Positions 49,502 through 63,523 of a DNA stretch of 64,000 bases are shown here, piece after piece; the stretch's first letter is position 1; the number at the start of each line of letters is the position of its first letter. The notes below the pieces were generated by a model that ran no database searches, was not told where the DNA came from, and saw nothing but the letters and a program-made list of their open reading frames with translations. The position numbers were made by a program, and so were the translations under genes. Location of the stretch: IMG/VR virus record IMGVR_UViG_3300030329_006583, positions 62,001 to 126,000 of that record; one strand, written 5' to 3'.

Positions 49502-51140
49502 GAACCTTTTTTAATAGAATTTCATATTGTGGAAAATATAATGCATCAATATCAGTATTTAAAAAACAATTAATCGCATGTTGTGGTGTTTCACATATAG
49601 GTTCCCTATCATTAAAACTAGTGTTGAGTATAATAGGCACACCGGAATGTGTATGCCATTTTTTTAAAAACCCATAGTACCATGCATTGTCATTTTCCGT
49701 TACAGTTTGCAATCTAGCACTTCCATCAAAATGAACGACTGCTGGTACCTTATCCTTCATTTCATCTTTAAACATCAATACAAATTGCATGTACGCGCTT
49801 TCGATAGGATTTTTAAACCAATTTTGTGCCTCTTCATACAAGATTGACGGAGCAAAAGGTCGATACCATTGGCGATGTTTAACTTTCGCATTTACCCTAT
49901 CTTTCATTTCTTTTCGGCGAGGATCTGCTAAAATGCTTCTATTCCCTAATGCCCTACGACCTGATTCTGAACCTTCATTAAAAATTGAAACAATGCCTCC
50001 TGACTTTAAAAGGTTTATCACATCTTCATCATTTGATTTATTTATTTCAATATCTGTGGGTAAATTTTGTAATGCAGCATCTACATCCTCTTTTTTCCAC
50101 TCTTCACCAAGATAGGGTGAAAGATTATCATTCCATTGAACGCGCGGATTTCCTAAATGATGATGCCATACCCATTGTGCTGCACCTAATGACAAACCGC
50201 CATCGTACGGTACCGCTGGAATATAAACACCATCTATACGATCCGGAAACCAACTTTTTATTTTTCCAGCTATCACAGAGTTTAATGAAACACCGCCGGC
50301 CAAACATATGTTTTTGCAATGTGGCGACGCATTTAAGGCAAATTCAATAAATTCCTTCACCAATCTCTCTGTGGCGCTTTGTAAACCTGCCGCTAAATCA
50401 AATTTATCTTGTTCAGATCTATCGGCTATTTCAGACCATTTATTCAGATATGGGTGAACAGGATCCTTTCCTTTTACATACGCACCCTTAGGTTGATTTG
50501 GAGGTTTAAATCCCGCAGACAACACATCCGTTGTAAGCATTTTATAAAAATCATCATGATATTTTGTAGGATCACCAGGTGCTGCCATGGCCATCACAGA
50601 ACCCTCTTGTCCCCCTAGGGGCCACCCATTCTGTAATTTAAATATATAACGTGTTACCCGAGTCCAAACTCCGCCTATGTTAATTTGATGAGTTGGAAAT
50701 TTTCTAATACCGGTTAATTGTGTATCACTGCCATACCACAACGTTGTTGCTGTTTCACCACCATTATCATCTTCCACACCACCCCCATCCAAGGTTATAA
50801 CAATTGCATCATTAAATTTACTTGAATAAAATGCATGTGCTGCATGTGCTTGATGATGGGAAATAAAAAAGAACTTACCACCATTTTTTTCCGCCAATTC
50901 TTTTGCGGTATTAAAAGATACTTGATGTTGTGAAGTCTTTGAAGTTGGATAAACGGTGGCAAAATTAACTATATCTTCAATATCATCATCATTCAACCTA
51001 TCAAACATAAATTTAATAGAATCAGTTTGTGGAGATTTTTCACGATTGTATCTTTCATATTCTGCGTGAATGGTTGGTATACCATTCTCTAATATACAAA
51101 AAGAGCTATCGTGTCCTGACCATATTCCTGCTATTTTCAT
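49488..51140 (-). CDS. Carbamoyltransferase (NodU/CmcH/TobZ family)
   Basis: HDSS, ERYNREK, HHQAHA, DGGG, AGGVSLN, GRRALGNRSILADPR, VKHRQWYRPFAP, VHFDGSARLQTV and LNTSFN. Confidence 0.95.
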   Translation of the reverse strand: MKIAGIWSGHDSSFCILENGIPTIHAEYERYNREKSPQTDSIKFMFDRLNDDDIEDIVNFATVYPTSKTSQHQVSFNTAKELAEKNGGKFFFISHHQAHAAHAFYSSKFNDAIVITLDGGGVEDDNGGETATTLWYGSDTQLTGIRKFPTHQINIGGVWTRVTRYIFKLQNGWPLGGQEGSVMAMAAPGDPTKYHDDFYKMLTTDVLSAGFKPPNQPKGAYVKGKDPVHPYLNKWSEIADRSEQDKFDLAAGLQSATERLVKEFIEFALNASPHCKNICLAGGVSLNSVIAGKIKSWFPDRIDGVYIPAVPYDGGLSLGAAQWVWHHHLGNPRVQWNDNLSPYLGEEWKKEDVDAALQNLPTDIEINKSNDEDVINLLKSGGIVSIFNEGSESGRRALGNRSILADPRRKEMKDRVNAKVKHRQWYRPFAPSILYEEAQNWFKNPIESAYMQFVLMFKDEMKDKVPAVVHFDGSARLQTVTENDNAWYYGFLKKWHTHSGVPIILNTSFNDREPICETPQHAINCFLNTDIDALYFPQYEILLKKVLDNE

Positions 51141-51142
51141 TT

Positions 51143-52165
51143 TTATTCCTCCAACCAATCCTGTATGTGTTCAGGCTGTGTGTCCTCTATGTCACTAACA
51201 TCTGCAGCTGAATTATCAAAATAATGTGCAGGACCTTCACTTTTAATTAAATCCTTACTATATTTTACCTGATCTCCATCATGTGTTTTGGCATAATCCC
51301 AGCCCAATGGAAAACAAACATCAACAAAAGATAAAGGCGAAGCATCGTTTGCCTCATCAATTAAAAATGGGGCCGGATTGACTTCATAATACAAACCACC
51401 AGCCCCGTCACTGGGTGGTGTATAGTGACCCAACCTTTTATCGCCTCTCACAACTGCATGCATTCCTCGAGGATCATTCCAGATGGATGCAACAGATGGT
51501 ATATGTGGATGTAATGGGATTAATTTTTCTAATCCAATTGCCTCTTTGGCTTTTTTGTCCATATAATCCTCAGCGGAAGTAAATCCATCGTGTGTTAACT
51601 CCATCCCTGAATCTACAGGGTAATTGCCTATCTCTTTAAACAATTTCGGAGAATACAAACCTGTTGTATTTAAATGAACATTAATCCTTTTCCAATATTT
51701 CCTTTTAGTGAGTGGTGATTGCAATAACCTGGTATTTAAATCTATGTCATTTTTTACAGTAACCCTTCTCACTGCATGAATAGACATATGATATAATTCC
51801 AAATTATGAAAATCTTTCACGGTTTCTAGAAAAACAGTGGAATTAATGATTTGGGTATCATCCTGAAAAAAGCATAGTACATTACAATCTTCAGGAACGT
51901 GCTTTAATATTTCATTTTTTCCTTTCCATTCATCTTGGGCCGGATCCCTTTCTGTCCTTAATATCAATTTGTCGATTTCTGCATGATTTTCTAAAATATT
52001 TAAAAGATCTGGTTCTGTGGATCCATTATCCACATAAATTACATTAATATTAATGTCATTTGCAGGATTTTCTTTTACTGCCTTAATACTTTGCAAAAGG
52101 GCCAACGAATAATATTTTCTATTGCATCCCGTGATCCCAATTGTTAAATTAACGTTTTCACTCAT
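51143..52165 (-). CDS. GT2-family glycosyltransferase
   Basis: YVDNGSTE, FFQDD and SAED. Likely start MSENV at 52165. Confidence 0.75.
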   Translation of the reverse strand: MSENVNLTIGITGCNRKYYSLALLQSIKAVKENPANDININVIYVDNGSTEPDLLNILENHAEIDKLILRTERDPAQDEWKGKNEILKHVPEDCNVLCFFQDDTQIINSTVFLETVKDFHNLELYHMSIHAVRRVTVKNDIDLNTRLLQSPLTKRKYWKRINVHLNTTGLYSPKLFKEIGNYPVDSGMELTHDGFTSAEDYMDKKAKEAIGLEKLIPLHPHIPSVASIWNDPRGMHAVVRGDKRLGHYTPPSDGAGGLYYEVNPAPFLIDEANDASPLSFVDVCFPLGWDYAKTHDGDQVKYSKDLIKSEGPAHYFDNSAADVSDIEDTQPEHIQDWLEE

Positions 52166-52166
52166 T

Positions 52167-52538
52167 TTAATCACCCTTTAAAATACGATAACTGTCACTA
52201 TCGAAATGTTGTGTTGAAAATTCAAATAGCTCCGTATCTTCAAGTGCTATCATCCTATGTCTTAAACCCCGGTAGACATGAAAGTTATCTCCCGGGCCTA
52301 AAATCACTTCTGACGCTGAATCAATATCGTCTGAATCTGAATATATTACGCGTAACTTACCAGATTGAACATAGAAAACCTCGTCTTTTAATTTGTGATA
52401 ATGCCACGAACACATCTTACCTTTCACAAAATATAATAGTTTTCCGCAGTATTCTTCACAATTAACAATCCATTTTTCAAATCCCCATCCCTTGGGCACA
52501 AATTTGATAATATGATTGGTATTAATATCGTTCTTCAT
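52167..52538 (-). CDS. Cupin (sugar isomerase/epimerase-like)
   Basis: KGWGFE..SWHYH..KDEVFYV..G.RH cupin metal motif. Confidence 0.85.
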   Translation of the reverse strand: MKNDINTNHIIKFVPKGWGFEKWIVNCEEYCGKLLYFVKGKMCSWHYHKLKDEVFYVQSGKLRVIYSDSDDIDSASEVILGPGDNFHVYRGLRHRMIALEDTELFEFSTQHFDSDSYRILKGD

Positions 52539-53298
52539 ACTCTTTCCTACTCAATTGATAAGTACCAGATTTTGTAACACTTAGGGAGGCACATTTGTTT
52601 GCGCATTTAACAGAATCTATTAAATCACCAGTTTCCAACCATCTACACACCATAGTTGATAAAAAAACATCACCGGCGCCACATACATCATGTACATCAA
52701 CAGTGTCAGTTGAGTAAATTTTATCCCTATATAATGCGCCACGTGAACCTAAGGTAACAACCAAATCTGTGTCACCAGAGAGATTAATGCAATTATTAAA
52801 TTCTTTTTCATTTATTTTAACAATACAATTTTCAAAAATTGACATGTCATGTTTCTTGGTGTCAACAAATACCTGGGTATTATAGTGTGACACTATATAC
52901 CGAATTAATTCCTTGGTTATATAACCTTTGTCATAATCTGATATTACAATGGCATCATATGATTCATTGGGCAATGATGATGTCTGTAGTGGCACAATAT
53001 GCCCTTCTATGTCATGACGCATAATTTGATAATTTGTTTTTTTATCAATAAACCTAATTTTTTTAATCTGTTGTTTATCATTGCAAAGGTAATTTATTTC
53101 ACCTACCAGTATATTTTTAAAATTTTGATAAACATTTGCGGACATCCCGTGTTTATGTTCTTTGGTAATTTGAGTTAAAATAGGTACCGGTGCCTCAGGA
53201 CTCAACCTATTACATTCTCCATATACATATTCATCGATGCATGCATCACCGATCAACAATATTTTGTATTGTTTTTGTTGTTGAGTATCCTTTAACAT
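52522..53298 (-). CDS. PfkB-family kinase, HldE/RfaE domain I-like (heptose-7-phosphate kinase)
   Basis: IGDACIDEY..RLSPEAPVP, ISDYDKG and DVCGAGDVF. Confidence 0.9.
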   Translation of the reverse strand: MLKDTQQQKQYKILLIGDACIDEYVYGECNRLSPEAPVPILTQITKEHKHGMSANVYQNFKNILVGEINYLCNDKQQIKKIRFIDKKTNYQIMRHDIEGHIVPLQTSSLPNESYDAIVISDYDKGYITKELIRYIVSHYNTQVFVDTKKHDMSIFENCIVKINEKEFNNCINLSGDTDLVVTLGSRGALYRDKIYSTDTVDVHDVCGAGDVFLSTMVCRWLETGDLIDSVKCANKCASLSVTKSGTYQLSRKEYEERY

Positions 53299-53638
53299 AT
53301 TCAAAAATTTTTACCTCACATATATCATTACCAACTACATTTTCTACCTGATAATCTCCTCCCTTCACAATTATATCAGGTTTTATAGATTTGATTAAAA
53401 GATAGGGTGTCTCTTCTTCGAAGATTATTACTTCATCAACACATGATAATTCTAACAATAATGCCCTTCTGTCATCTTCACAATATACGGGTCTTTTATC
53501 ACCTTTTAATTTCTTAACACTAGAATCACTATTTAAACCAACGATTACCTTATCACCAATCTCCTTACAATATTTTAACAATTCGAGATGACCTCTATGA
53601 AACACATCAAAACAACCATTTGTGAAAATAACTTTCAT
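53246..53638 (-). CDS. Heptose-1-phosphate nucleotidyltransferase, HldE/RfaE domain II-like
   Basis: FTNGCFDVFHRGH, GLNSDSSVKKLKG..RP, KGGDY and GYSTT. Confidence 0.92.
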   Translation of the reverse strand: MKVIFTNGCFDVFHRGHLELLKYCKEIGDKVIVGLNSDSSVKKLKGDKRPVYCEDDRRALLLELSCVDEVIIFEEETPYLLIKSIKPDIIVKGGDYQVENVVGNDICEVKIFEYVKGYSTTKTIQNIVDR

Positions 53639-54459
53639 ATATTGCCTTTTATTGCTTCAACTATTTCATTTAAATCATGATATTGGGCATCATTATTACA
53701 TTGTTTACAGGCGATTTTTAATCCACATGGACCATGGGTAGATATTATTATGTTTTTATTTTGTGGATACTGTACCATCCTCTTATCTTGATAACCGGTA
53801 ATTATTACAACAGATTGTGTATTAAATGCTGTTGCACCATGAACCAGGCCACCTTCTGAAGATACAAATAATTTTGACTTGCCAATTATTCCACACGCAA
53901 TCCTAAAACTTTCTGTAAATGTAAGATCTACACAATTTTTTAGTTTTTTTGGACTGGTACCTACCTGTACAACTTGTATTTCCTTTGAAATTTCATCAAC
54001 TATATTTTGCCATTTTTCAAAAGGGTATTCCCTATTTGGCGTGTAATCATGATTAGAAAATGGTTCTATTGTCACAAAATCTTTTTCCAAGTTGGTGATT
54101 GCCGCTTGTACTAGTTTTTCTTCTGATTCATCTAAGAAAATATCACACTTAAGTTCTGGGTTTTCAATCCCATAAACTTCACAAACCTGTTGTATAATAT
54201 GCTTTTCAAATCTATGAAATGCCTTATTAGGTGTATCCTGTTTACAATAATTCGATGCAGGATTGTTTAATTGAAGTGGCACACAATTCTCATTTTGTGC
54301 ATTTTCAGGCTGCCAAATGTGAGGATTATTATAAAATATTACAGACTGCACCGGTTTGATGGTCTGACCATGTTGTTCAAATGGGAAAGATTTAAGCCCG
54401 GATCTTTTATATATTTCTCTTGCGGCAGCTGTCCACGTCAAGTATCCACCTAAACCCAT
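53635..54459 (-). CDS. GT9-like (ADP-heptose-type) glycosyltransferase
   Basis: GLGG N-terminus, REYPFEKWQ, VQVG, SKLFVSSEGGLVHGA and a C-terminal Cys cluster. Adjacent to the HldE-like genes. Confidence 0.75.
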   Translation of the reverse strand: MGLGGYLTWTAAAREIYKRSGLKSFPFEQHGQTIKPVQSVIFYNNPHIWQPENAQNENCVPLQLNNPASNYCKQDTPNKAFHRFEKHIIQQVCEVYGIENPELKCDIFLDESEEKLVQAAITNLEKDFVTIEPFSNHDYTPNREYPFEKWQNIVDEISKEIQVVQVGTSPKKLKNCVDLTFTESFRIACGIIGKSKLFVSSEGGLVHGATAFNTQSVVIITGYQDKRMVQYPQNKNIIISTHGPCGLKIACKQCNNDAQYHDLNEIVEAIKGNI

Positions 54460-55373
54460 TAATGTCCTCCCTCTAAAACCCTCATATACATCTGTGCCAC
54501 TTTCTTTATGTCCAGGTATGAATTATCAATTTCTAATTTTGGGAGCTCTAGGGAAGGTATTAGAATCTCGTAGGGATTATCATAATCAGTCAATTCGAAA
54601 TTATATAGGTTGTTTTCTTCTATGACTATCCCATTTTTTCTTACAATTTCCTTTGTTCCCCCAGAGCTAGAACAAATAACCGGGCAACCTTGAGAAAGGG
54701 ATTCTACCACAACATTTGGACAATGATCCAACCATGCCAAATGTATCATCCAATCCGCGGCTGAAAACATCTGCAAACATGCATCATGAGATATTGAACC
54801 GGTATAAAAAACATCATCATGATTGACCGGACAGTCCGGACTAGATCCCATCACCACCAAACAGGAGCTTGGGTATTTTTCTTTAAGCTTAAAAAATATT
54901 TCCATATTTTCTTTAAGTCTTTTTTGCCTATGCCAGTTTGCAGAACAAACAAACATATGTTTATATGCATTACGGATATTTAAAATCTCAGGTATATCAA
55001 CATTCACCCTTCTGAGTTCTATGCCGTTATGAATAACAACACCTCTTCTTTCCCCCCAATGGTGACATGTCATTTTTTTATCAAATTCAGACTGCCAAAT
55101 AACATAATCACAATTATCATATGCTAACTTTATTCCTTGGTTATGTGTTTTAAATTGGTCTGGTTTAAACCATATACCATCTAATCGCTGAACCTTCATG
55201 GCGTCCAATTTTAATGGTGTTGCCGGCTCAATAAAAATTAAAACAGAATCATAATCATGATTATAACCTACAATTTCATTTCCCATATTAACTAATTCAC
55301 CAGCCAATCTATGCGCAAAAGAATTAGGTCCACTAGTGGAGGAAAAATTGACATTTGAAAAATGAATCTTCAT
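54459..55373 (-). CDS. Glycosyltransferase, GT4-like
   Basis: SGPNSF, QRLDG, VIHNG and DHCPNVVVESLSQGCPVI. Confidence 0.88.
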   Translation of the reverse strand: MKIHFSNVNFSSTSGPNSFAHRLAGELVNMGNEIVGYNHDYDSVLIFIEPATPLKLDAMKVQRLDGIWFKPDQFKTHNQGIKLAYDNCDYVIWQSEFDKKMTCHHWGERRGVVIHNGIELRRVNVDIPEILNIRNAYKHMFVCSANWHRQKRLKENMEIFFKLKEKYPSSCLVVMGSSPDCPVNHDDVFYTGSISHDACLQMFSAADWMIHLAWLDHCPNVVVESLSQGCPVICSSSGGTKEIVRKNGIVIEENNLYNFELTDYDNPYEILIPSLELPKLEIDNSYLDIKKVAQMYMRVLEGGH

Positions 55374-55388
55374 ATATACATTTTAAAT

Positions 55389-56312
55389 TTAATTTTGATA
55401 AAGTTCATTTAGTGTAGAGAACAATTGTGTCATACATTCTTCCCAAGATATAGGAACATAAAGATTTTGAAAATGACTATCATTAAGAATTAATTCTTCA
55501 AGTTCAGTAAATCCACCAAAAACCTTACTTTGTTTTAAGCCAGCATCGGCAAATTCAATAGCACCACCGCCCTCTGCATGTACATATGTAGGCAATCCCA
55601 GCGCCAGAGATTCCAGGATATGATTAGGACCCGGATCAAATCTTGAACCACTAACATATATGTCATGCTTTAATAATTCGTGTGCCAATTCAATACCCGA
55701 TAATGGCGAAATACAATGAGTGTTTTTAAAAGAATTACGATGACGGCCCACATATGTAAATTCTATATCATCCCTTTTTCCCGCCAAATAATCTAAAAAA
55801 TCATATACATCAAATCCCTTGAGGATGTTATTAGACCAATGATGGGTCACTATTTTTAATTTATCAGAATTTGACTTTGTGTTTTTTCTTAGTTTCAAAT
55901 ATGCAGAATTCACACCATTATGCTGAACAGATGTGCTAGGGCATGCCCAGCCTTTTGCACCGAAATATTCCTCCATCCATTTTGAAACAAATATTGTGTG
56001 ATCGATCATTTGGCTACACTGAAGCAGCATTATATCCATATGCTCGGTGTTTTTTCTTGCATCACATTCATTAATTCTCTGAACTAACTTGCAATTTGGA
56101 TTGTGCAACTTATATTGGGAGGCGTCATTAATATTAAATCCCCCCGAATCGCTACGAGGATCCATAAGAAAAATAAGATCTATATTGGTATGTCCTAGGT
56201 TGGTGACAATCTCAATGGAATTAAGATTACAAAAATCAAAAAATCCCTTAACAAAATGATTACCTCCACCCCATGGGCCAGGACGAGGAGAACGATTGAT
56301 TGCAATTTTCAT
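55389..56312 (-). CDS. Glycosyltransferase, GT4-like
   Basis: PWGGGNHF, KGFD and SRFDPGPNHILESLALGLP. Confidence 0.85.
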   Translation of the reverse strand: MKIAINRSPRPGPWGGGNHFVKGFFDFCNLNSIEIVTNLGHTNIDLIFLMDPRSDSGGFNINDASQYKLHNPNCKLVQRINECDARKNTEHMDIMLLQCSQMIDHTIFVSKWMEEYFGAKGWACPSTSVQHNGVNSAYLKLRKNTKSNSDKLKIVTHHWSNNILKGFDVYDFLDYLAGKRDDIEFTYVGRHRNSFKNTHCISPLSGIELAHELLKHDIYVSGSRFDPGPNHILESLALGLPTYVHAEGGGAIEFADAGLKQSKVFGGFTELEELILNDSHFQNLYVPISWEECMTQLFSTLNELYQN

Positions 56313-57031
56313 GATATAAATCCCCGGCTTCTTAGATAATCACCTTCACTTTTCTGAAACTTTGCATCATCGGTTTGAAATGTTTCGGGTTTCATGTCAA
56401 TTGTGTAATGGTAGGTAACTATGGGTTCATAATGCCAATTTCCTGCTGCTTGATGTAACACTGGGAGATATATTGTTTGATCACCAATTCGTTTAAAATA
56501 CTCCCCATCTTCACCACGAAAATTTGCATCTTTTACGTTTTCAATAAGTGATTTTCGAAATGTTTTTAAATGTGATGATACCCATGGATGTTCATAAGGA
56601 TTGGCAGTTTTAGGTAGTGGTGCTGATATATTGTGATTAGAAAATGACCATCTATGTGCAGTCCATAATGCACCAACATTTAAGGTATTATAATGATGAT
56701 TAATAATAGTCAATGCATCACAATCACACAACCAATCATCGCCATCCAATCTGCAGATAATATCATTTGATTCTGTTTCCTTGAGTCCTTCAACAATATT
56801 TTTAATTTCCCAATGTTTTTCTGTGTTAACAGTTAAGCTTATTTTATCATCACCAAAACCAAATTGTCTTTTGAAATTATCTATTACTTCAGGGGTGCCA
56901 TCAGTTGACATGTCATCCCTAATTATGATTTTCCAATTATTATGTGTTTGAAAACCCACTGAAAAAAGGCTTCGGGTAATTGTTGATGCAGCATTGAACG
57001 CCGGCATAATAAAAACAAAACGATTATTCAC
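56309..57031 (-). CDS. GT2-family glycosyltransferase
   Basis: IMPAFNA, DDMSTDGT and LDGDDWL. Confidence 0.9.
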   Translation of the reverse strand: MNNRFVFIMPAFNAASTITRSLFSVGFQTHNNWKIIIRDDMSTDGTPEVIDNFKRQFGFGDDKISLTVNTEKHWEIKNIVEGLKETESNDIICRLDGDDWLCDCDALTIINHHYNTLNVGALWTAHRWSFSNHNISAPLPKTANPYEHPWVSSHLKTFRKSLIENVKDANFRGEDGEYFKRIGDQTIYLPVLHQAAGNWHYEPIVTYHYTIDMKPETFQTDDAKFQKSEGDYLRSRGFIS

Positions 57032-58961
57032 CTAAATATTCCTTAATACATGTTGGATGTGATATATCAAGTTCCAGGTGTTGTGTTGGTTTAGAGAAAT
57101 CTACTCTTTCATGAAAAACCCATCCCCCCATCTTTTCTTTTAATTCTTGGGCCAGGTTATCAATTTCTTCTTCAGTAACATCTTTCCACGCTTTATCAAA
57201 AAACATGTTATTTTCAGGAATGTCTTCTTGTGTAATGTTATAAAGGCTAAGCCAGTGTTTTGACCAATAGTTTTTATACGTTCTTATTTTTCTTCCCAAA
57301 TCAAACCAAGAATAATGATGAACAGAGGGTAATAATTCTATGTTTCTACCAAACCATTCCTGATATTTTTCAAATGCTTCCTTATTTCCTGCCATGGCGT
57401 GAATCCTTAGGTTATGTGCATCTGTATGATAAAAAGATGCATGTGCTATTACTTCACCGGTATCATTATCAATATAATCACAACCATCTGTACCCATTGC
57501 TGCGTACAAATTATTGTCTTCATCATATTTTCTAAAATTAGCAGGAATTCCATGAGTAATGTGATTTTTATTTCTAGAAATTCTCCACTTCCATGGAGTT
57601 ACATCCATTCTCACCTTTTCTTCAGAACCCCAATATTCCACAACTGGAAGACACACTAAATCTACTTGTGTAGGAAATGATTTAATCAAATTAAATATTT
57701 TTTCATAATCATTTTCATGCACTACTTCATCGGAATCCTGTTGCCAACAAAAATCTCCGTTGCACAAAGATCTCGCGTGTGCCTTCTGTGTACCATCAAA
57801 AACTGCATGTCTGGGGTGATTCCAATCTTTTTCATTTTTGAATACTTTCAATCTCTCTTCTGTTTTTGACCATTCCTCTAGTTTTTCCCAGGTGCCATCA
57901 GTTGAACCACCGTCAACCACTATCACTTCATCACAAAAACCCAACATCGATGTAATAGAGGCTTCATAAGGATATTTTTGAGAAATACAATCTTTCGTTG
58001 TAGTATAACCAGAAAGGCTAGGTCTCCAATCCATTGAGTGTTTAATTCCTTTCCAAAACGTTTCTCGAGCGGCATACAAATAAGCCTCGGTATCGAATGC
58101 ATCATCTGTATTAAACCATATTTCATCCTTATGCTGAACATTATCATTTAAGTGAAGTTTGCAACCTAACATTTTCGCTTCTATCACCATTCTTGGGCAT
58201 GTATCACCCCCAGCTGGCAAATAAACAAAGCCTTCGGCTTGTGCCAATCTCTCTAGTACTTCTTCATAAGGTAAATTCCATACTACTTCATAATCTTTAT
58301 TGTTTTCCTTGCACCATTGTTCTGCAGATTCTGCACCTTTAACCCAGCTCGTAGAACCCAATACAATCCAACCCTTTCTTTCATGGGATGAATATTTTTC
58401 ATTTAATAATTTAACAGTAAGAAAAAAATTATGATCAAAAACAGAACTTAATACTGTATTATTTTTTTCCTCAAGAAATGGAAATACTTTAAAATATATT
58501 TCTTGCTGTTTTTCTGACATCCACCAAAGAGATTGTGCCCCATAATAAAATGCAGATATCATTTTTCCATGCATTTCATTGTGACAGTTACACATATGTG
58601 ACTCGGCGGCATAATGCTTGTCTGGTGAACGGTACTTACAATACTTGTAATCATATTCTAAAATAGAATAATTTAAATTTCCAACAATGCTGGGAATTAA
58701 ATTCATATCCATATTGGAAAAGTTACCAAATACCCAATATTTTTCATATCCGGATTCTAGAATTTCCAACGTTAAATCTTTACTTTTTAGTTTAAAAATA
58801 TCAAAAGGACATGAGGTTATTAATGCATCAGATGTAAGTTCAGCACCCCCACAATATTCTTCAGCAAACATGTCTGAAACAAAGATTATTTCTGTGTTTT
58901 CCGGAATTTCAATAGCAGTTGAATTCGATGATGTGTTAAATGGACTACTAGAACCAAACAT
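57024..58961 (-). CDS. Bifunctional glycosyltransferase: N-terminal GT-B fused to C-terminal GT2
   Basis: GGAEL..KG..DTCPRMVIEAKMLGC (GT-B), then VVDGGSTDGT..QDSDE (GT-A). GGAGG precedes the ATG at 58961. Confidence 0.85.
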   Translation of the reverse strand: MFGSSSPFNTSSNSTAIEIPENTEIIFVSDMFAEEYCGGAELTSDALITSCPFDIFKLKSKDLTLEILESGYEKYWVFGNFSNMDMNLIPSIVGNLNYSILEYDYKYCKYRSPDKHYAAESHMCNCHNEMHGKMISAFYYGAQSLWWMSEKQQEIYFKVFPFLEEKNNTVLSSVFDHNFFLTVKLLNEKYSSHERKGWIVLGSTSWVKGAESAEQWCKENNKDYEVVWNLPYEEVLERLAQAEGFVYLPAGGDTCPRMVIEAKMLGCKLHLNDNVQHKDEIWFNTDDAFDTEAYLYAARETFWKGIKHSMDWRPSLSGYTTTKDCISQKYPYEASITSMLGFCDEVIVVDGGSTDGTWEKLEEWSKTEERLKVFKNEKDWNHPRHAVFDGTQKAHARSLCNGDFCWQQDSDEVVHENDYEKIFNLIKSFPTQVDLVCLPVVEYWGSEEKVRMDVTPWKWRISRNKNHITHGIPANFRKYDEDNNLYAAMGTDGCDYIDNDTGEVIAHASFYHTDAHNLRIHAMAGNKEAFEKYQEWFGRNIELLPSVHHYSWFDLGRKIRTYKNYWSKHWLSLYNITQEDIPENNMFFDKAWKDVTEEEIDNLAQELKEKMGGWVFHERVDFSKPTQHLELDISHPTCIKEYLGE

Positions 58962-59050
58962 ATACCCATACCTCCAGAGCTTAAGCAAATTTATTTCAAA
59001 TTATTCTGAATGTATATTATACAAAACTAATTACTGTAGTATTTTATTTT

Positions 59051-59142: not shown

Positions 59143-60441
59143 TTACAATATACTAGTAGCTAGAGAAGCAATTTCAGATCTGTGCCCATTTATTAAATGT
59201 ACATGACCGGTTAACATAGATTCTTTGAATTTTTGTACCACAATTGTTAGGCCATTAGATCTTTTATCAATGTAAGGTGTATCCACTTGATCTGTATCAC
59301 CCAATAAAACTATTTTAGAACCTTTACCGATTCTGGTAATTATTGTTTTTAGTTCATGAATGGTGGCATTTTGTGCTTCATCAACAATTACAAATGAATC
59401 ATTAAATGTTCTTCCTCTAATATATGACAGAGGGGAAATTTCTATTTCACCCTTTTGACGCATACTTTCAAAATACGATATATCGTTAAATGCGTGTCTA
59501 AAATTATCTATTAATGGTGCCATCCATGGTGCCATTTTTTCATCAACATCACCAGGTAAATAACCTAAATCCCTACCTACCGGTTCAATTGATCGTGTAA
59601 CTACTATTCTTTTATATTTTTTTTTAAATAAACCTGATAGTGCACTCATGAGTGTAATAAATGTTTTACCAGATCCTGCAATTCCAGTAATTGTGACTAG
59701 CTGTATATTGGGATTATTTAATAATCCGACTGCAAATGCTTGTTCTTTGTTTTTAGGTTCAATCCCTAAATCACTGTTAAAAGAAGCCAATCGATTTTTT
59801 TTAATATATCCGTTTTCATATATGCCTAATAAAGATTTGCCAAGCGGCGATTTTCCAATAATAAATTGATTTTCAAATACTTTTTCATCACCATTATATT
59901 GTATTTTTCCATGTTCGAAAAACAGATCAACATCACTATCAGAAAGTTCCAGCTGTATTTTACCTGAATATGCTGTATCTGCAGATAATTCTAGATGATC
60001 CTTCCAATAGTCTTCACCAATTAATCCTAATGCATCACATTTAACACGAAGGTTTATGTCTTTTGTAACAACTTTAACAGGGGTATTTTTAAATTCTAAG
60101 GCTAATTTAAGTGCACTACCCAATATTTGATTGTCGGCTAATTCTATGTCCAAACCATCAGGGATATTATTTCTAGAGTACTTGGTTTCAATTCTAATGG
60201 TCTGATCAGATTCCGGAATAGTTACGGCCTTATCCAATCGCCCAATGTCTCTAAGGCTATCTAGATAGCGATTGACATACCTGGCAGATTCACCTAATAA
60301 ACCAGGCTTATTTTTAAATTTGTCTAATTCATCTAAAACGGGAAGTGGAAGAACCACGTCATTTCCGGGGAATGAATGAATAGCTGTCATATCATAAAGA
60401 AGAACACTAGTGTCAACCACTAATACTTTTCTAGAGCTCAT
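59143..60441 (-). CDS. phoH: PIN-domain PhoH-family ATPase (PhoH2/YlaK type)
   Basis: PIN motifs VVDTSVLL, ELD, DNQI and TKDINLR; Walker A GIAGSGKT; LGYLPG, YIRGRTF, DEAQN, TRIG and GDTDQ. Likely start at 60441. Confidence 0.93.
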   Translation of the reverse strand: MSSRKVLVVDTSVLLYDMTAIHSFPGNDVVLPLPVLDELDKFKNKPGLLGESARYVNRYLDSLRDIGRLDKAVTIPESDQTIRIETKYSRNNIPDGLDIELADNQILGSALKLALEFKNTPVKVVTKDINLRVKCDALGLIGEDYWKDHLELSADTAYSGKIQLELSDSDVDLFFEHGKIQYNGDEKVFENQFIIGKSPLGKSLLGIYENGYIKKNRLASFNSDLGIEPKNKEQAFAVGLLNNPNIQLVTITGIAGSGKTFITLMSALSGLFKKKYKRIVVTRSIEPVGRDLGYLPGDVDEKMAPWMAPLIDNFRHAFNDISYFESMRQKGEIEISPLSYIRGRTFNDSFVIVDEAQNATIHELKTIITRIGKGSKIVLLGDTDQVDTPYIDKRSNGLTIVVQKFKESMLTGHVHLINGHRSEIASLATSIL

Positions 60442-60496
60442 GCAATTTCCTTTCGTGTACATTTAACGTATACACAATATTGTTCTTAATATAAAT

Positions 60497-60808
60497 ATGG
60501 AAACGTTTAATATGAAGCATAAAATAAATTTAATGAATTTATCAAATGGGGAAAAAGAAAAGATTGATTGTGATAGTACGTGTTATGAAATTTGCAAAAA
60601 TTATGATGTAGAGTGTAATCAAACACTTTGCAATTATTGGATTAACGATAATAAAAACAATAATTGTGTATTTCTTAGTGCTAATAACGGTGCTAAAACA
60701 TTACAACAGATTGGTGACATATTTGGCATTACAAGAATGCGCATATGCCAAATTGAAAAAAATGCCTTGAAAAAGCTTTGTAAAAAAAGTAAAAAATACG
60801 GGTATTAA
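60497..60808 (+). CDS. Stand-alone sigma70 region-4 HTH protein with Cys-rich N-terminus
   Basis: KTLQQIGDIFGITRMRICQIEKNALKKL matches sigma region 4.2; six Cys precede it. It is the only credible plus-strand gene. Confidence 0.85.
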   Translation: METFNMKHKINLMNLSNGEKEKIDCDSTCYEICKNYDVECNQTLCNYWINDNKNNNCVFLSANNGAKTLQQIGDIFGITRMRICQIEKNALKKLCKKSKKYGY

Positions 60809-61884
60809 ATACCACCCAACAAAGTAATTGCAACCAATCCGGGAATTCCTTCTTTTACGTAAACACCTGAAAATAGTGTGTTTGTTCTTCCGCCAACATA
60901 AGAAAATGCCGATTCCAGTCTTTTGCTCACCATTGGATCACCTGCCATTTCACTATTTGCAATCAATAACAAAACACCGGTCTCTGTGTTGCCTGTTGGT
61001 CCGGGACAAGGGGAAGATTTAAGAGAACCTTGGAATACACTAGCACCTAAATCAGATTTTGAAACATCCCTAATAACAGTACTCCCAATTACCATTCTAC
61101 CATTAACACCCAAGCATTTTTCTAAATCCTTTGAATCAAATGTTTGAATAGGTGATGGTTCATCTGCTAATTTAAAAACCTGACTCAATAATTTTGCAAA
61201 GTTTTTATTAGCAGCTGGGAACATATTTAACATCCCAACCTTTCCTCTTAGAAGTTGTAACTGTTTTTCATTATCAATTACAATATGAGGATAATCGCAG
61301 ACATCTTCTAGAACAGATTTATAATTTGTTGAAATTGTGGGATTTAATAATTCTTGTGCAGTAGGTTTTGAAACAACATAAACCACTTTACCAGAAGCCT
61401 CTGACGATGAAAGGTATCTACTAATAGAGCCATGTAATTCGGCACATGCACTCCCGGTACCGCCACCACCACCGGCTAATACAAATACCCAATCCACTTT
61501 CCCTATTTTGGATCTTAATGCATCTTCAACCATGGTACTATTATTGCGTAATACCTCTTTCCCCAAAACAATATCTTTTCCGACCCCATCTGCACCAGGG
61601 ATTACTAACACATGCTGATCTTCTACGCCGGTAGGTAAATCCTTGAGTGTGGTGTTAACAAGCAATGTTTTATTAAACCCTAGATCCATAAATGCTTTTG
61701 CTAATTTTCCACCACCACCACCAACTCCGATAAAAGCGCAATTAATGGCACTAGTAAATGTATTTTCCGGAAGAAGCTGATCATCCGCAATGGGTTCATC
61801 ATCATATGCTTCCACAAAATCAAATTCATCCATCACATCTGGTGGATTGATATAATCGTCATCCTGTTTTTTCTTTTTGCTCAC
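60805..61884 (-). CDS. FtsZ/tubulin-superfamily GTPase (phage tubulin-like)
   Basis: FIGVGGGGGK, NTT..DL, GVGKD, AGGGGGTGS signature, IDNEK and T7-like FDSKD. GTG start at 61884, 6 nt after AAGGAG. Confidence 0.9.
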   Translation of the reverse strand: MSKKKKQDDDYINPPDVMDEFDFVEAYDDEPIADDQLLPENTFTSAINCAFIGVGGGGGKLAKAFMDLGFNKTLLVNTTLKDLPTGVEDQHVLVIPGADGVGKDIVLGKEVLRNNSTMVEDALRSKIGKVDWVFVLAGGGGGTGSACAELHGSISRYLSSSEASGKVVYVVSKPTAQELLNPTISTNYKSVLEDVCDYPHIVIDNEKQLQLLRGKVGMLNMFPAANKNFAKLLSQVFKLADEPSPIQTFDSKDLEKCLGVNGRMVIGSTVIRDVSKSDLGASVFQGSLKSSPCPGPTGNTETGVLLLIANSEMAGDPMVSKRLESAFSYVGGRTNTLFSGVYVKEGIPGLVAITLLGGI

Positions 61885-62006
61885 GATACGCTCCTTCTTA
61901 TTTTTGAGTGGAAGATTATAATTAGTCATAGATTTTACTACTGTTGACGGCATATGTCCCTTATTCCACCTTCATATATATACGGTAATTCCTTAAATTA
62001 ATTAAG

Positions 62007-62405
62007 TGGAGACGCCGGGAATCGAACCCGGGTCCTAAATACCTCCAACATCATGTCATTCACAAGGTTAGCCATTTTACTCTAAACCGGCAAAGTAACT
62101 CGAATTATCCCATCCCATATCGAGTATCTGGGATCCACCTGTATAAAAAGGTAATCACTTATTTCTAACTGAAAACCTTTTTTACCACCAGGGTAACCAT
62201 TCAGCCCTATTTACTCGAAGGCCAATCGAGTTTTGCTGGTCTTAGTTAAAAAGGCTCCCAGCAGCCTCGGATTAAGCAGCTAGTGCGTAATCGTTGTAAG
62301 TGTCAGTGTTGGCACTTATTAAGTTCAGCGTTTTTACAGAGACCTTCGCTGCCCTCTGCCTTGCACATAATGGTTTTGATACTCAGTCGAAACCTTTACA
62401 TCCCC
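62007..62405 (-). ncRNA. ssrA: tmRNA, one-piece, 399 nt; tag (A)ANTDTYNDYALAA
   Basis: 5' end GGGGATGTAAAGGTTTCGAC and 3' end GGACCCGGGTTCGATTCCCGGCGTCTCCA. The acceptor stem has G3:U70 and discriminator A. Tag ORF at 62313-62272 follows AATAAGT. CCA is not encoded. Confidence 0.96.
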
Positions 62406-62420
62406 AATATTAATTTAAAT

Positions 62421-62606
62421 CTATTTTCTAGATTTTTCTTCACTAATTGTTAATTTTACCAGATCTTGAGCTTCCTTTTTCAATAATCTTAAACCCTTTC
62501 TAGCTCTTACACCGGCTGATGCATTTCCACTAGCATTTTTATGTACGTCTAACTCAAGACTCTCTACCAATACCTTTATTTCGTTCCACTTATCAATGAT
62601 TGACAT
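62421..62606 (-). CDS. Histone H1-like (Hc1-family) small DNA-binding protein
   Basis: LVESLELDVHK..GNASAGVRARKGL matches the Hc1 core GNKAAGxRARK. AGGAG SD present. Confidence 0.8.
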   Translation of the reverse strand: MSIIDKWNEIKVLVESLELDVHKNASGNASAGVRARKGLRLLKKEAQDLVKLTISEEKSRK

Positions 62607-62616
62607 AATTTTCTCC

Positions 62617-62832
62617 TTAAATTATAATATTAGAATCATTTTGATTCTGCGCTTCTGTGATATCATCCATGAATTGCTGACAACATTGCGAAATTTCCGT
62701 GAGTGCATTATTATCTTCTAATTCTAATGATAACAAATAACAAATTTTTAAAATCTGTTGTTGTGTAACACCATAATCAAGTATGGTTTTTACAATTTCT
62801 CTGCTCACTATTGATTTTTCTATTGCGTCCAT
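62617..62832 (-). CDS. Hypothetical protein (71 aa)
   Basis: ORF tightly packed in the operon. Confidence 0.7.
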   Translation of the reverse strand: MDAIEKSIVSREIVKTILDYGVTQQQILKICYLLSLELEDNNALTEISQCCQQFMDDITEAQNQNDSNIII

Positions 62833-62842
62833 ATTTTACGTT

Positions 62843-63307
62843 TTACTCCACCGCCCTTCTATCTATAAATGATTCTATCTTAAATTTATCTTCTTTTTCA
62901 AAAACCAACATTTTACCGGTGATTTCATTTTCAACGTCATCTTTTGTCAAAACTACAAAAGATCCCCATCTTTTATTATCTATAATAAATTTAACATTTT
63001 CATAAGTGGGCAAATCACATTTATACGATTCTAGAATTTCAACTACACCTTTATCCAAAGTATATTTTATATCAATAATGGAGGATTGTGATTTTAAATC
63101 ATCCTTCCCAGCCATAATATGAGATTTACAAATATCAAATATTTTATGTATCACCCCACAATTATTACATGTAACATATTTTGGAATGACTGTATCACTA
63201 TCATCAATAATAGAAAACACAACGAATTTATGATATGCAAAATTCTCTTTATTCCTAAACTGAGGTAATACACAATGACATTCAATTATGTGTTTAATCC
63301 CATCCAT
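62843..63307 (-). CDS. Hypothetical Zn-ribbon-like protein (154 aa)
   Basis: CHC and CNNCGVIH..C motifs. Confidence 0.7.
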   Translation of the reverse strand: MDGIKHIIECHCVLPQFRNKENFAYHKFVVFSIIDDSDTVIPKYVTCNNCGVIHKIFDICKSHIMAGKDDLKSQSSIIDIKYTLDKGVVEILESYKCDLPTYENVKFIIDNKRWGSFVVLTKDDVENEITGKMLVFEKEDKFKIESFIDRRAVE

Positions 63308-63316
63308 GTTTTTATT

Positions 63317-63523
63317 TTATTGCTTTTTAACTACAGATAACACATTATTTGATCCACGATCAAACGACATATTGACACTATTTGTCACTGTATTTAATAA
63401 TGATTTTAATTCTTCTTTTGTTAATGTTGATCTGTATGTTTCTACCACTGAATTATTAATTTGAGAAACAACAAAATCCCTTAATTCATATAATTTTCTG
63501 CCAAGTTCACTTTCTAAACTCAT
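63317..63523 (-). CDS. Hypothetical protein (68 aa)
   Basis: GGAGG precedes the ATG at 63523 (MSLESELG...). Confidence 0.65.
   Translation of the reverse strand: MSLESELGRKLYELRDFVVSQINNSVVETYRSTLTKEELKSLLNTVTNSVNMSFDRGSNNVLSVVKKQ

What the first reader, a model, noticed from the sequence alone, without database searches (positions are those of the whole stretch)
60805..61884. Phage FtsZ/tubulin homologue with inverted architecture: acidic N-terminal extension and no C-terminal tail
Seen: the GTPase motifs are intact, but the protein ends right after the core (VAITLLGGI-stop). It starts with KKKK followed by about 35 acidic residues (DDDYINPPDVMDEFDFVEAYDDEPIADD). Established: PhuZ and TubZ use C-terminal tails for filament assembly, and FtsZ uses its C-terminal peptide for membrane anchoring. 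Inference: a distinct phage tubulin lineage whose N-terminal arm takes over partner binding, or a dominant-negative inhibitor of host FtsZ.
Basis: partly seen in the sequence, partly recalled or inferred. Interest (0 to 1): 0.62.

Follow-up and report, generated by a model that had tools for sequence, protein, structure and literature searches.

The report
Tail-less phage tubulin with acidic N-arm
This gene encodes a previously undescribed, very abundant branch of the tubulin/FtsZ family in uncultured marine jumbo phages; it has lost the usual C-terminal tail and instead carries a conserved acidic peptide at its N-terminus, pointing to a phage cytoskeleton built differently from the known ones.

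Summary
A minus-strand ORF (60805..61884 from a GTG with a good ribosome-binding site) encodes a tubulin/FtsZ-fold GTPase with intact nucleotide-binding and T7 catalytic loops. It stops two residues after the last core strand. A 34-residue N-terminal peptide has 14 acidic and no basic residues.

Neither feature is an artefact. More than 1000 homologues (66-89% identical, 354-421 aa) and 342 IMG/VR viral contigs share the abrupt end and the invariant F-x-F...Y-D-D-x-P arm.

The host genome is a 267 kb marine phage with a distant T4-type capsid. Sequence searches found no chimallin, PhuZ or phiKZ-type RNA polymerase.

The protein is not an FtsZ orthologue, a PhuZ or a classical TubZ. It forms a fully supported clade on a very long branch. 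That clade is allied to a larger, also uncharacterised, viral TubZ-like group whose genes sit beside terminase and portal.

Most likely it is a GTP-driven filament former. The N-terminal peptide would replace the C-terminal tail as the docking element. Modelling gives only weak, confounded support for arm-core contact. The host-FtsZ-inhibitor reading is poorly supported.

Verdict: new variant of a known kind.

The parts
60805..61884 (-). Most likely coding sequence of the tubulin/FtsZ-like GTPase (GTG start, 359 aa plus stop)
   Evidence: ORF list. GTG start with AAGGAG 6 nt upstream. The start column is Met in 66% of homologues. Pfam Tubulin E 5e-8. AF2 model pLDDT 92.8.
61885..61953 (-). Possible 5' extension of the frame (ATG at 61953 or 61929). 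It is poorly conserved and is probably leader, not coding.
   Evidence: Columns 1-23 have low occupancy and low identity in the family alignment. pLDDT is below 50.
61891..61896 (-). Shine-Dalgarno-like AAGGAG before the GTG start
   Evidence: Read directly from the sequence.
61762..61863 (-). Conserved acidic-aromatic N-terminal arm: 34 residues, 14 acidic, 0 basic. The core of the motif is F-D-F-V-x-A-Y-D-D-x-P, followed by L-L-P-x-N.
   Evidence: Invariant and near-invariant columns in 35 and 108 homologues. Translation. Short helix over DFVEA at pLDDT 66-83 in the deep model.
60808..61761 (-). Tubulin/FtsZ-fold core (GTPase domain plus C-terminal activation domain), ending at the last beta-strand
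   Evidence: Foldseek against PDB: FtsZ 2e-19, CetZ 3e-18, TubZ 1.3e-17. VIA-align Z: 31.8 TubZ, 31.6 CetZ2, 27.2 FtsZ.
61705..61728 (-). T1 phosphate-binding loop GVGGGGGK
   Evidence: Translation. Invariant glycines.
61450..61473 (-). T4 tubulin signature loop GGGGGTGS
   Evidence: Translation. Invariant G161-A169.
61120..61146 (-). T7 synergy loop with D273 and D276, aligned to E. coli FtsZ D209 and D212
   Evidence: HMMER alignment to FtsZ. Invariant Q270, F272, D273, K275, D276, L277 and E278.
60799..60818 (-). Terminator-like hairpin and T-run overlapping the stop codon
   Evidence: Consensus scan. One site was found and 1.4 were expected by chance, so this is suggestive only.
62004..62405 (-). 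Phage tmRNA gene directly upstream and co-oriented (a linked feature, not part of the protein)
   Evidence: ARAGORN. Rfam RF00023 at 128 bits. A co-oriented tmRNA ends within 1 kb upstream in 41 of 76 related loci.

Best explanation
The gene encodes a GTP-binding, most probably filament-forming, cytoskeletal protein of the tubulin/FtsZ superfamily. It is a core gene of a large clade of uncultured marine jumbo phages with T4-type capsids.

It belongs to the mobile-element (TubZ-like) side of the superfamily and not to cellular FtsZ. It has diverged along a very long branch.

Shown: the fold; intact T1, T4 and T7 loops; absence of any C-terminal tail; a strongly conserved acidic-aromatic N-terminal peptide; strong purifying selection within the family.

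Inferred: subunits polymerise head-to-tail with GTP, as other family members do. The N-terminal peptide, which sits next to the start of the core, serves as the docking element that C-terminal tails provide in PhuZ, TubZ and FtsZ. It would either clamp onto a neighbouring subunit to stabilise the filament or hook a basic adaptor or cargo.

The likely cellular role is to position phage DNA or capsids for packaging in a phage that makes no chimallin nucleus. This role is suggested because related genes sit beside terminase and portal, or between the major head protein and the head-tail adaptor.
For: Fold and motifs.

Family-wide tail loss and arm conservation.

Viral origin and abundance: the record is a 267 kb virus record. 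IMG/VR holds 342 relatives, on contigs up to 293 kb.

Capsid type: T4-like major head protein.

Lineage placement. The exhaustive search gives the family at 716 bits and intermediates at 365-378 bits. A halo follows at 80-160 bits. E. coli FtsZ scores 33-34 bits. hhalign of family against halo gives probability 100 and E 1.7e-56 over 318 columns. The halo profile scores the window protein 201 bits, TubZ/RepX 150, FtsZ 74 and PhuZ 13. The tree clade has SH-aLRT 100.

Packaging and head context. The order SbcC-like / 78 aa / tubulin-like / TerL / portal, or part of it, is seen in most of 80 halo loci. The order MCP / tubulin-like / adaptor is seen in one synteny type of the family.

Arm-core contact. 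The deep-alignment model raises the arm to pLDDT 66-83 and gives it a short helix. The complex prediction of arm against core scored 0.60, against a best control of 0.01. The tool graded this 'weak support'. The pass mark was reached by 58 of 80 solved complexes and by 2 of 110 mismatched pairs. Scores of 0.60 or under were seen in only 7 of those 80 solved complexes and in both mismatched pairs that passed. The runs agree in at least 85% of contacts, and partner pLDDT is at least 50.
Against: No polymerisation, GTPase or localisation data exist. No cultured phage carries the family.

The complex test is confounded. The two chains are contiguous in the native protein, so contact near the cut site is expected. 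No contact list or coordinates were available, so the docking site is unknown.

The shallower model left the arm disordered.

No neighbour is conserved across all loci, so no partner is identified.

Gene context differs among four synteny types. In the window itself the gene lies between a tmRNA gene and a convergent sigma-70 region-4 gene, with PhoH beyond, not in the head module.

Confidence: 0.55

Rival explanations
1. Type III-like (TubZ-style) segregation motor. Filaments would push or pull the phage genome during a carrier or plasmid-prophage state. The acidic arm would bind a DNA-bound adaptor in place of the TubZ tail-TubR contact.
For: The wider clade scores closest to TubZ/RepX and related plasmid proteins. 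The best structural match is B. cereus TubZ at Z 31.8. A small basic DNA-binding protein (Hc1-like) lies upstream in the window's synteny type.
Against: No TubR-like gene or iteron array lies next to the gene. No neighbour is conserved across loci. The only genome-assembly hits were four short MAG contigs, and no integrated or plasmid copy was seen. The phage has a T4-type lytic-style architecture.
Confidence: 0.15
2. Antagonist or substitute of host FtsZ. The protein would co-assemble with or cap host FtsZ filaments to block or redirect host division, and the missing membrane-tether peptide would make it dominant-negative.
For: As a single sequence its best PDB hits are FtsZ, at E 1e-9. It has an FtsZ-like GGGGG T1 loop. 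It lacks the C-terminal peptide that tethers FtsZ.
Against: Identity to FtsZ is only about 20%. TIGR00065 scores 43.5 bits against a cut-off of 295. Profiles place it with mobile-element tubulins. The catalytic T7 loop and both polymer faces are strongly conserved within the family. That fits self-assembly better than capping. The long stem shows it is not a recent capture of a host gene.
Confidence: 0.1
3. A non-filamentous regulatory GTPase, or a filament former whose N-terminal segment is only a solubility or autoinhibitory element with no docking role.
For: The arm is predicted disordered with a shallow alignment. No partner was identified.
Against: The invariant aromatic and acidic positions in the arm argue for a specific contact and not bulk charge. 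The conserved T7 loop implies polymer-dependent GTPase activity.
Confidence: 0.1
4. Assembly or annotation artefact: a frameshift or early stop hides a normal C-terminal tail.
For: None found.
Against: The identical protein occurs on 10 independent contigs. All 119 full-length homologues listed end at the same place. A convergent gene and a hairpin occupy the DNA after the stop.
Confidence: 0.01

Closest known systems
TubZ / RepX (type III plasmid and prophage partition GTPases; PDB 4ei7, 3m8k, 4xcq)
   Same: Tubulin/FtsZ fold with the highest structural score: Z 31.8, rmsd 2.3 over 308 residues. Both are carried on mobile elements. The halo that links to the window's family scores TubZ/RepX at 150 bits, twice the score of FtsZ. 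The halo's best PDB hit is RepX, at E 2.9e-13.
   Different: Directly, the family profile scores RepX only 19.5 bits. There is no TubR gene, no tubC repeats and no C-terminal tail. RepX has no N-terminal arm and a long basic tail. The T1 loop is GGGGG.
PhuZ (tubulin of nucleus-forming Chimalliviridae; PDB 3rb8, 3zbq, 9pm9)
   Same: Both are jumbo-phage-encoded tubulin-family proteins. PhuZ assembly depends on a terminal tail that grips the next subunit (PMC7950403). The phiKZ PhuZ tail is acidic and hydrophobic, chemically like the arm here.
   Different: PhuZ has the lowest structural similarity among family members, Z 19-20. There is no sequence match: -2.3 bits. The docking peptide is at the opposite end. 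The genome shows no chimallin, PhuZ or phiKZ-type RNAP by sequence and has a T4-type capsid.
FtsZ (cell division)
   Same: GGGGG T1 loop, GGGxGTG-type T4 loop and T7 aspartates. FtsZ gives the best single-sequence PDB hits, at E 1e-9.
   Different: About 20% identity. TIGR00065 scores 43.5 against a cut-off of 295. There is no linker or conserved C-terminal peptide. The gene is viral.
CetZ (archaeal cell-shape tubulin-like proteins; PDB 4b45, 3zid)
   Same: Structural Z of 31.6 and 30.0 with near full-length coverage.
   Different: CetZ is archaeal and cellular. No sequence-level membership was shown.
Bacillus phage G gp138 (annotated putative FtsZ-like protein) and the uncharacterised viral 'halo' (matches phrog_17961)
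   Same: These are the nearest relatives found. The halo scores 80-160 bits against the family profile. Phage G gp138 scores 51 bits against the family and 156 bits against the halo profile. The halo is viral, with at least 531 IMG/VR relatives, and has acidic N-termini.
   Different: The halo has a GxGQxGG T1 loop and a short C-terminal tail with a recurring P..R motif in 35 of 57 members. It sits next to TerL and portal. Phage G gp138 has no N-arm and a 63-residue tail. None has a tested function.

Membership tests
Tubulin/FtsZ superfamily | Pfam PF00091 GTPase domain at or above the gathering score | tested here: met
   33.9 bits against a cut-off of 33, E 5e-8. 35 bits in the genome search. 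The match is marginal but is backed by the fold.
Tubulin/FtsZ superfamily | Two-domain tubulin fold with T1, T4 and T7 loops | tested here: met
   AF2 pLDDT 92.8. Z 27-32 to TubZ, CetZ and FtsZ. Loops verified.
Tubulin/FtsZ superfamily | GTP-dependent polymerisation | not testable with these tools
   Inferred only, from the conserved T7 aspartates.
FtsZ | NCBIfam TIGR00065 equivalog score at or above the cut-off | tested here: not met
   43.5 bits against 295.2.
FtsZ | C-terminal linker plus conserved C-terminal peptide for membrane tethers | tested here: not met
   The protein ends two residues after the last strand, family-wide.
TubZ (type III partition) | Adjacent TubR DNA-binding gene and tubC centromere repeats | tested here: not met
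   No conserved small upstream partner. No iteron array in 60300..63400.
TubZ (type III partition) | Flexible C-terminal tail required for assembly dynamics and TubR binding (PMC5322520) | tested here: not met
   No tail.
TubZ (type III partition) | Sequence-level membership (Pfam TubZ_C or TubZ-like_C, or a strong match to RepX) | tested here: not met
   No TubZ_C hit at E up to 1. The family profile scores RepX 19.5 bits. Only the halo shows weak TubZ-like_C.
PhuZ | Sequence similarity to PhuZ (phrog_4733) | tested here: not met
   No PHROG hit. -2.3 bits. Lowest structural Z of the superfamily.
PhuZ | Co-occurrence with chimallin and multisubunit phage RNAP | tested here: not met
   tblastn and phmmer with phiKZ gp54, gp55 and gp39 found nothing. 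Caveats: sequence-level sensitivity only, and the genome is about 78% complete.
CetZ | Archaeal cellular gene with CetZ-specific sequence signature | not tested
   Only structural similarity was measured, Z 31.6. No CetZ sequences could be brought into the tree.

The most novel reading that the evidence does not exclude
A nucleus-independent phage cytoskeleton is widespread in the ocean. T4-like marine (jumbo) phages would use a tubulin-family filament, evolved from the terminase- and portal-linked TubZ-like gene of their relatives, to traffic capsids or DNA for packaging. A reversed assembly logic would apply: a conserved acidic N-terminal peptide, not a C-terminal tail, grips the next subunit or the cargo.
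Probability: 0.3. Interest if true: 0.8.

Novelty: new variant of a known kind. Interest (0 to 1): 0.6.

Why it matters
Known phage tubulins are PhuZ, in nucleus-forming phages, and TubZ, in plasmid-like prophages. Both depend on C-terminal tails.

This work shows a third, much larger and entirely uncultured set of viral tubulin-family proteins. IMG/VR alone holds at least 342 plus 531 such contigs, in phages with T4-type capsids.

The window's branch has removed the tail and fixed an acidic-aromatic peptide at the other end.

If it polymerises, it widens the range of ways tubulin-like filaments are assembled and coupled to cargo. It would also mean that cytoskeleton-based organisation of infection is common among abundant marine phages and is not a speciality of phiKZ-like phages.

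The invariant arm residues give a direct handle for experiments.

Tried and rejected
1. Frameshift or hidden tail: rejected.

2. PhuZ or nucleus-forming phage: rejected at sequence level.

3. FtsZ orthologue: rejected.

4. Conserved partner gene next to the tubulin gene: none found across 82 loci, which fall into at least four synteny types. The 78-aa basic protein upstream of halo genes has a homologue elsewhere in this genome but none near family genes.

5. Centromere-like repeats: none found.

6. Cultured relatives: tblastn of the family and of two halo members against 50,697 phage records found only a weak match to phage G gp138. BFVD gave only uncultured 'FtsZ' entries at 17-19% identity, followed by PhuZs.

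7. Host: only four short MAG contigs carry the family, three binned as Flavobacteriales and one as Hyphomonadaceae. These are probably mis-binned phage DNA, so the host hint is weak.

8. Deep phylogeny: the relations among the family, the halo, TubZ/RepX, phage G gp138 and FtsZ are unresolved. PhuZ's placement is a long-branch artefact.

10. Arm docking site: model coordinates are not exposed and the complex tool gave no contacts.

11. Homology of the family arm with the halo's acidic N-termini: not shown. The hhalign alignment starts only at the LLPxN segment, and a simple motif count was barely above shuffles.

12. Literature: four full-text searches found no description of this family. One further search call failed on a term-format error.

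Full report
OBSERVATION

The window carries a minus-strand ORF at 60805..61953 (382 aa in the longest frame).

It has AAGGAG six bases upstream. In a 35-sequence family alignment this column is Met in 66% of rows, while the columns before it are poorly occupied and poorly conserved. I therefore take 60805..61884 (359 aa) as the likely gene. The ATGs at 61953 and 61929 remain possible alternatives. Residue numbers below follow the long ORF (P0001).

Translation confirms three loops:
- T1 loop GVGGGGGK
- T4 signature GGGGGTGS
- T7 loop QTFDSKDLE, whose two aspartates align with E. coli FtsZ D209 and D212

The protein ends two residues after the last predicted strand. A terminator-like hairpin overlaps the stop. 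A convergent gene overlaps the stop by four bases.

The acidic stretch is 34 residues long, with 14 acidic and no basic residues.

IS IT REAL AND NON-RANDOM?

The word-based search found 1029 homologues. The best 120 are 66-89% identical and 354-421 aa long apart from one 301-aa fragment. Most come from marine metagenomes, on contigs up to 291 kb.

Every full-length one ends 0-8 residues after the same final strand and carries the arm. In the arm, F44, F46, Y50, D51, D52, P54, L61 and N64 are invariant in 35 sequences. F44, F46, L61 and N64 remain invariant in 108 sequences that include two 40-42% identical outliers. The KKKK run is not conserved.

The identical protein is on 10 independent contigs. 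A frameshift or a one-off truncation is excluded.

THE GENOME

The window is part of a 267,118-bp IMG/VR virus record that CheckV rates about 78% complete. GC content is 40%. My own simple ORF caller found 338 ORFs; every one of the 40 longest it listed is on one strand.

Its major head protein is a distant T4-type protein. The best matches are an uncultured huge phage, Flavobacterium phage immuto, Microcystis phage Mel-JY01 and Rhodothermus phage RM378, at 40-48% identity. Its large terminase and portal are recognisable.

phiKZ chimallin, PhuZ and RNAP beta-like queries find nothing in it. Only one tubulin-family gene is present.

Four short MAG contigs carry the family. Three are binned as Flavobacteriales. 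This is at most a weak host hint.

WHAT THE PROTEIN IS

Pfam Tubulin is only just above threshold. TIGR00065 (FtsZ) scores 43.5 bits against a cut-off of 295. PHROGs gives only a weak hit to an unnamed family.

An AF2 model from 108 sequences is confident: pLDDT 92.8 and pTM 0.88.

A non-redundant structure comparison gave these Z-scores:

| Match | Z |
|---|---|
| B. cereus TubZ | 31.8 |
| CetZ2 | 31.6 |
| CetZ | 30.0 |
| B. thuringiensis TubZ | 28.1 |
| phage c-st TubZ | 28.0 |
| FtsZ | 27.2 |
| tubulins | 22-24 |
| PhuZ | 19-20 |

Foldseek agrees that FtsZ, CetZ and TubZ are about equally close.

The exhaustive profile search of 1.84 billion representatives returned 932 proteins at E up to 0.001. 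They fall into four tiers:
- the family itself, as one 50%-identity representative at 716 bits
- two intermediates at 365-378 bits, which are also tail-less and carry a [DE]-F-D-F-[VI] arm
- fragments
- a 'halo' of full-length proteins at 80-160 bits

Against the same family profile, phage G gp138 scores 51 bits, E. coli FtsZ 34, TubZ/RepX 19.5 and PhuZ -2.3.

Family and halo are clearly homologous: hhalign probability 100, E 1.7e-56, 318 columns.

The halo profile gives these scores:

| Protein | Bits |
|---|---|
| window protein | 201 |
| Alicyclobacillus plasmid protein | 178 |
| phage G gp138 | 156 |
| RepX/TubZ | 150 |
| FtsZ | 74 |
| PhuZ | 13 |

The halo's best solved relative is RepX/TubZ, at E 2.9e-13.

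In a tree, the family plus intermediates form a clade with SH-aLRT 100 on a stem of 2.34 substitutions per site. Deeper relations are unresolved.

I conclude that this is a long-branch offshoot of the mobile-element, TubZ-like side of the superfamily. It is not a captured host FtsZ.

THE HALO AND WHAT IT SAYS ABOUT ARCHITECTURE

Halo proteins share these features:
- a GxGQxGG T1 loop
- short acidic N-termini, with a median net charge of -7
- in 35 of 57 cases, a 10-25-residue C-terminal tail with a recurring P..R motif

None of 12 family members has that tail motif. Classical RepX/TubZ has no N-terminal arm and a long basic tail.

So the window's family did not invent an acidic N-terminus from nothing. 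It lengthened and fixed one, and lost the tail. Homology between the two kinds of arm is not demonstrated.

The halo is viral, with at least 531 IMG/VR relatives. Among the 80 loci fetched, the gene order is SbcC-like, a 78-aa basic protein, tubulin-like, large terminase, portal. Terminase and portal are about 48% identical to those of the window's genome, but the tubulin-like protein is only 27% identical. That contrast, together with the long stem, points to accelerated change on the way to the window's family. Strong constraint followed: within the family the protein is about as conserved as the head protein.

CONTEXT OF THE FAMILY

Across 82 loci no neighbour is universal, and at least four arrangements exist.

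The window's type has this order: RNaseH-like, a small ORF, Hc1-like, tmRNA, the tubulin gene, a convergent Cys-rich sigma-70 region-4 protein, then PIN-PhoH.

Another type places the gene between the major head protein and the head-tail adaptor.

A co-oriented tmRNA ends within 1 kb upstream in 41 of 76 loci with enough upstream DNA.

No iterons lie nearby.

THE ARM

With 35 sequences the arm was modelled as disordered. With 108 sequences it rose to pLDDT 66-83, with a short helix over D45-A49.

I ran a complex prediction of the arm (residues 24-62) against the core (63-382). It scored 0.60, against a best control of 0.01. The tool graded this 'weak support':
- the pass mark was reached by 58 of 80 solved complexes and by 2 of 110 mismatched pairs
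- scores of 0.60 or under were seen in only 7 of those 80 solved complexes, and in both mismatched pairs that passed
- the runs agreed in at least 85% of contacts
- partner pLDDT was at least 50

I regard this test as confounded. The two chains are neighbours in the native protein, so some contact at the cut is expected. No contacts or coordinates were available.

From published work, PhuZ assembly needs its C-terminal tail to grip the next subunit (PMC7950403), and TubZ dynamics need its flexible tail (PMC5322520). The phiKZ PhuZ tail is acidic and hydrophobic. The arm here is chemically similar but sits at the other end. This is an analogy and not a test.

MECHANISM

I commit to this: a GTP-dependent filament former whose N-terminal peptide is the docking element, acting in the organisation of phage DNA or capsids for packaging (confidence 0.55).

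- Shown: the fold, the motifs, the architecture, the conservation, the viral setting and the lineage.
- Inferred: polymerisation, the arm's role and the cellular role.

Rivals are a TubZ-like segregation motor (0.15), a host-FtsZ antagonist (0.10), a non-docking arm or non-filamentous GTPase (0.10) and an artefact (0.01).

NOVELTY

No cultured phage in the 50,697-record collection carries the family. Two halo members found nothing closer than a weak match to phage G gp138. BFVD holds only uncultured 'FtsZ' entries at 17-19% identity. Four literature searches found no description.

I rate it a new variant of a known kind.

LIMITS

- The superfamily tree lacks CetZ, archaeal FtsZ and tubulin sequences.
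- The host is unknown.
- The genome is incomplete.

Noticed in passing
window 62004-62405 (-): A phage-encoded one-piece tmRNA (Rfam 128 bits; tag ANTDTYNDYALAA) lies directly upstream of the tubulin-like gene and is co-oriented with it. The same adjacency, ending within 1 kb upstream, occurs in 41 of 76 related loci across different synteny types. Tags vary (ANDNVEYDYALAA, ANNNNHFEYALAA and others). None of the 80 halo loci has a tmRNA.
   Followed up: partly
window 62421-62606 (-): A 61-aa protein with a Pfam Hc1 hit (chlamydial histone H1-like). It lies upstream of the tmRNA in the window's synteny type. It is a small DNA-binding protein and a conceivable partner for an acidic arm.
   Followed up: no
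window 60497-60808 (+): A convergent 103-aa Cys-rich protein with a sigma-70 region-4 HTH. It overlaps the tubulin gene's stop by 4 nt and sits immediately downstream in 16 of 82 related loci.
   Followed up: partly
window 59143-60462 (-): A PIN-domain plus PhoH ATPase fusion. It is the most frequent nearby gene, present in 37 of 82 loci.
   Followed up: no
G000:C1 about 127.8-132.2 kb (just beyond the window's right end; L002:1742-6177): The phage carries the PrkA / DUF444 (YeaH) / SpoVR trio, a bacterial stress or sporulation-associated kinase module, next to a NUDIX gene.
   Followed up: no
window about 50800-58990 (L002:12993-21149): A run of sugar-modification genes: GT2 and GT1 glycosyltransferases, a cytidylyltransferase-like gene, a PfkB kinase, a cupin and a carbamoyltransferase.
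   Followed up: no
L112-L191 (IMG/VR halo loci): A fixed module in related T4-like marine phages: SbcC-like nuclease subunit, a 78-aa basic protein (pI 10; homologue at G000:C1:150379-150615), a TubZ-like tubulin, the large terminase and the portal. The complete five-gene order is in 20 of the 80 loci fetched, and the same order without the SbcC-like gene in 28 more.
   Followed up: partly
L070:6001-7647: In one related contig the tubulin-like gene's match spans 1647 nt instead of about 1030 nt, and it is called as two ORFs (106 and 434 aa). This suggests an insertion or a frame break inside the gene.
   Followed up: no
G000 whole record: Every one of the 40 longest ORFs (450 aa or more) listed by a simple caller lies on one strand of the 267 kb record, and the caller found 338 ORFs in all. 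GC content is 40%. The relatives' loci also encode a full sigma-70, GroEL and peptide deformylase (L005).
   Followed up: no
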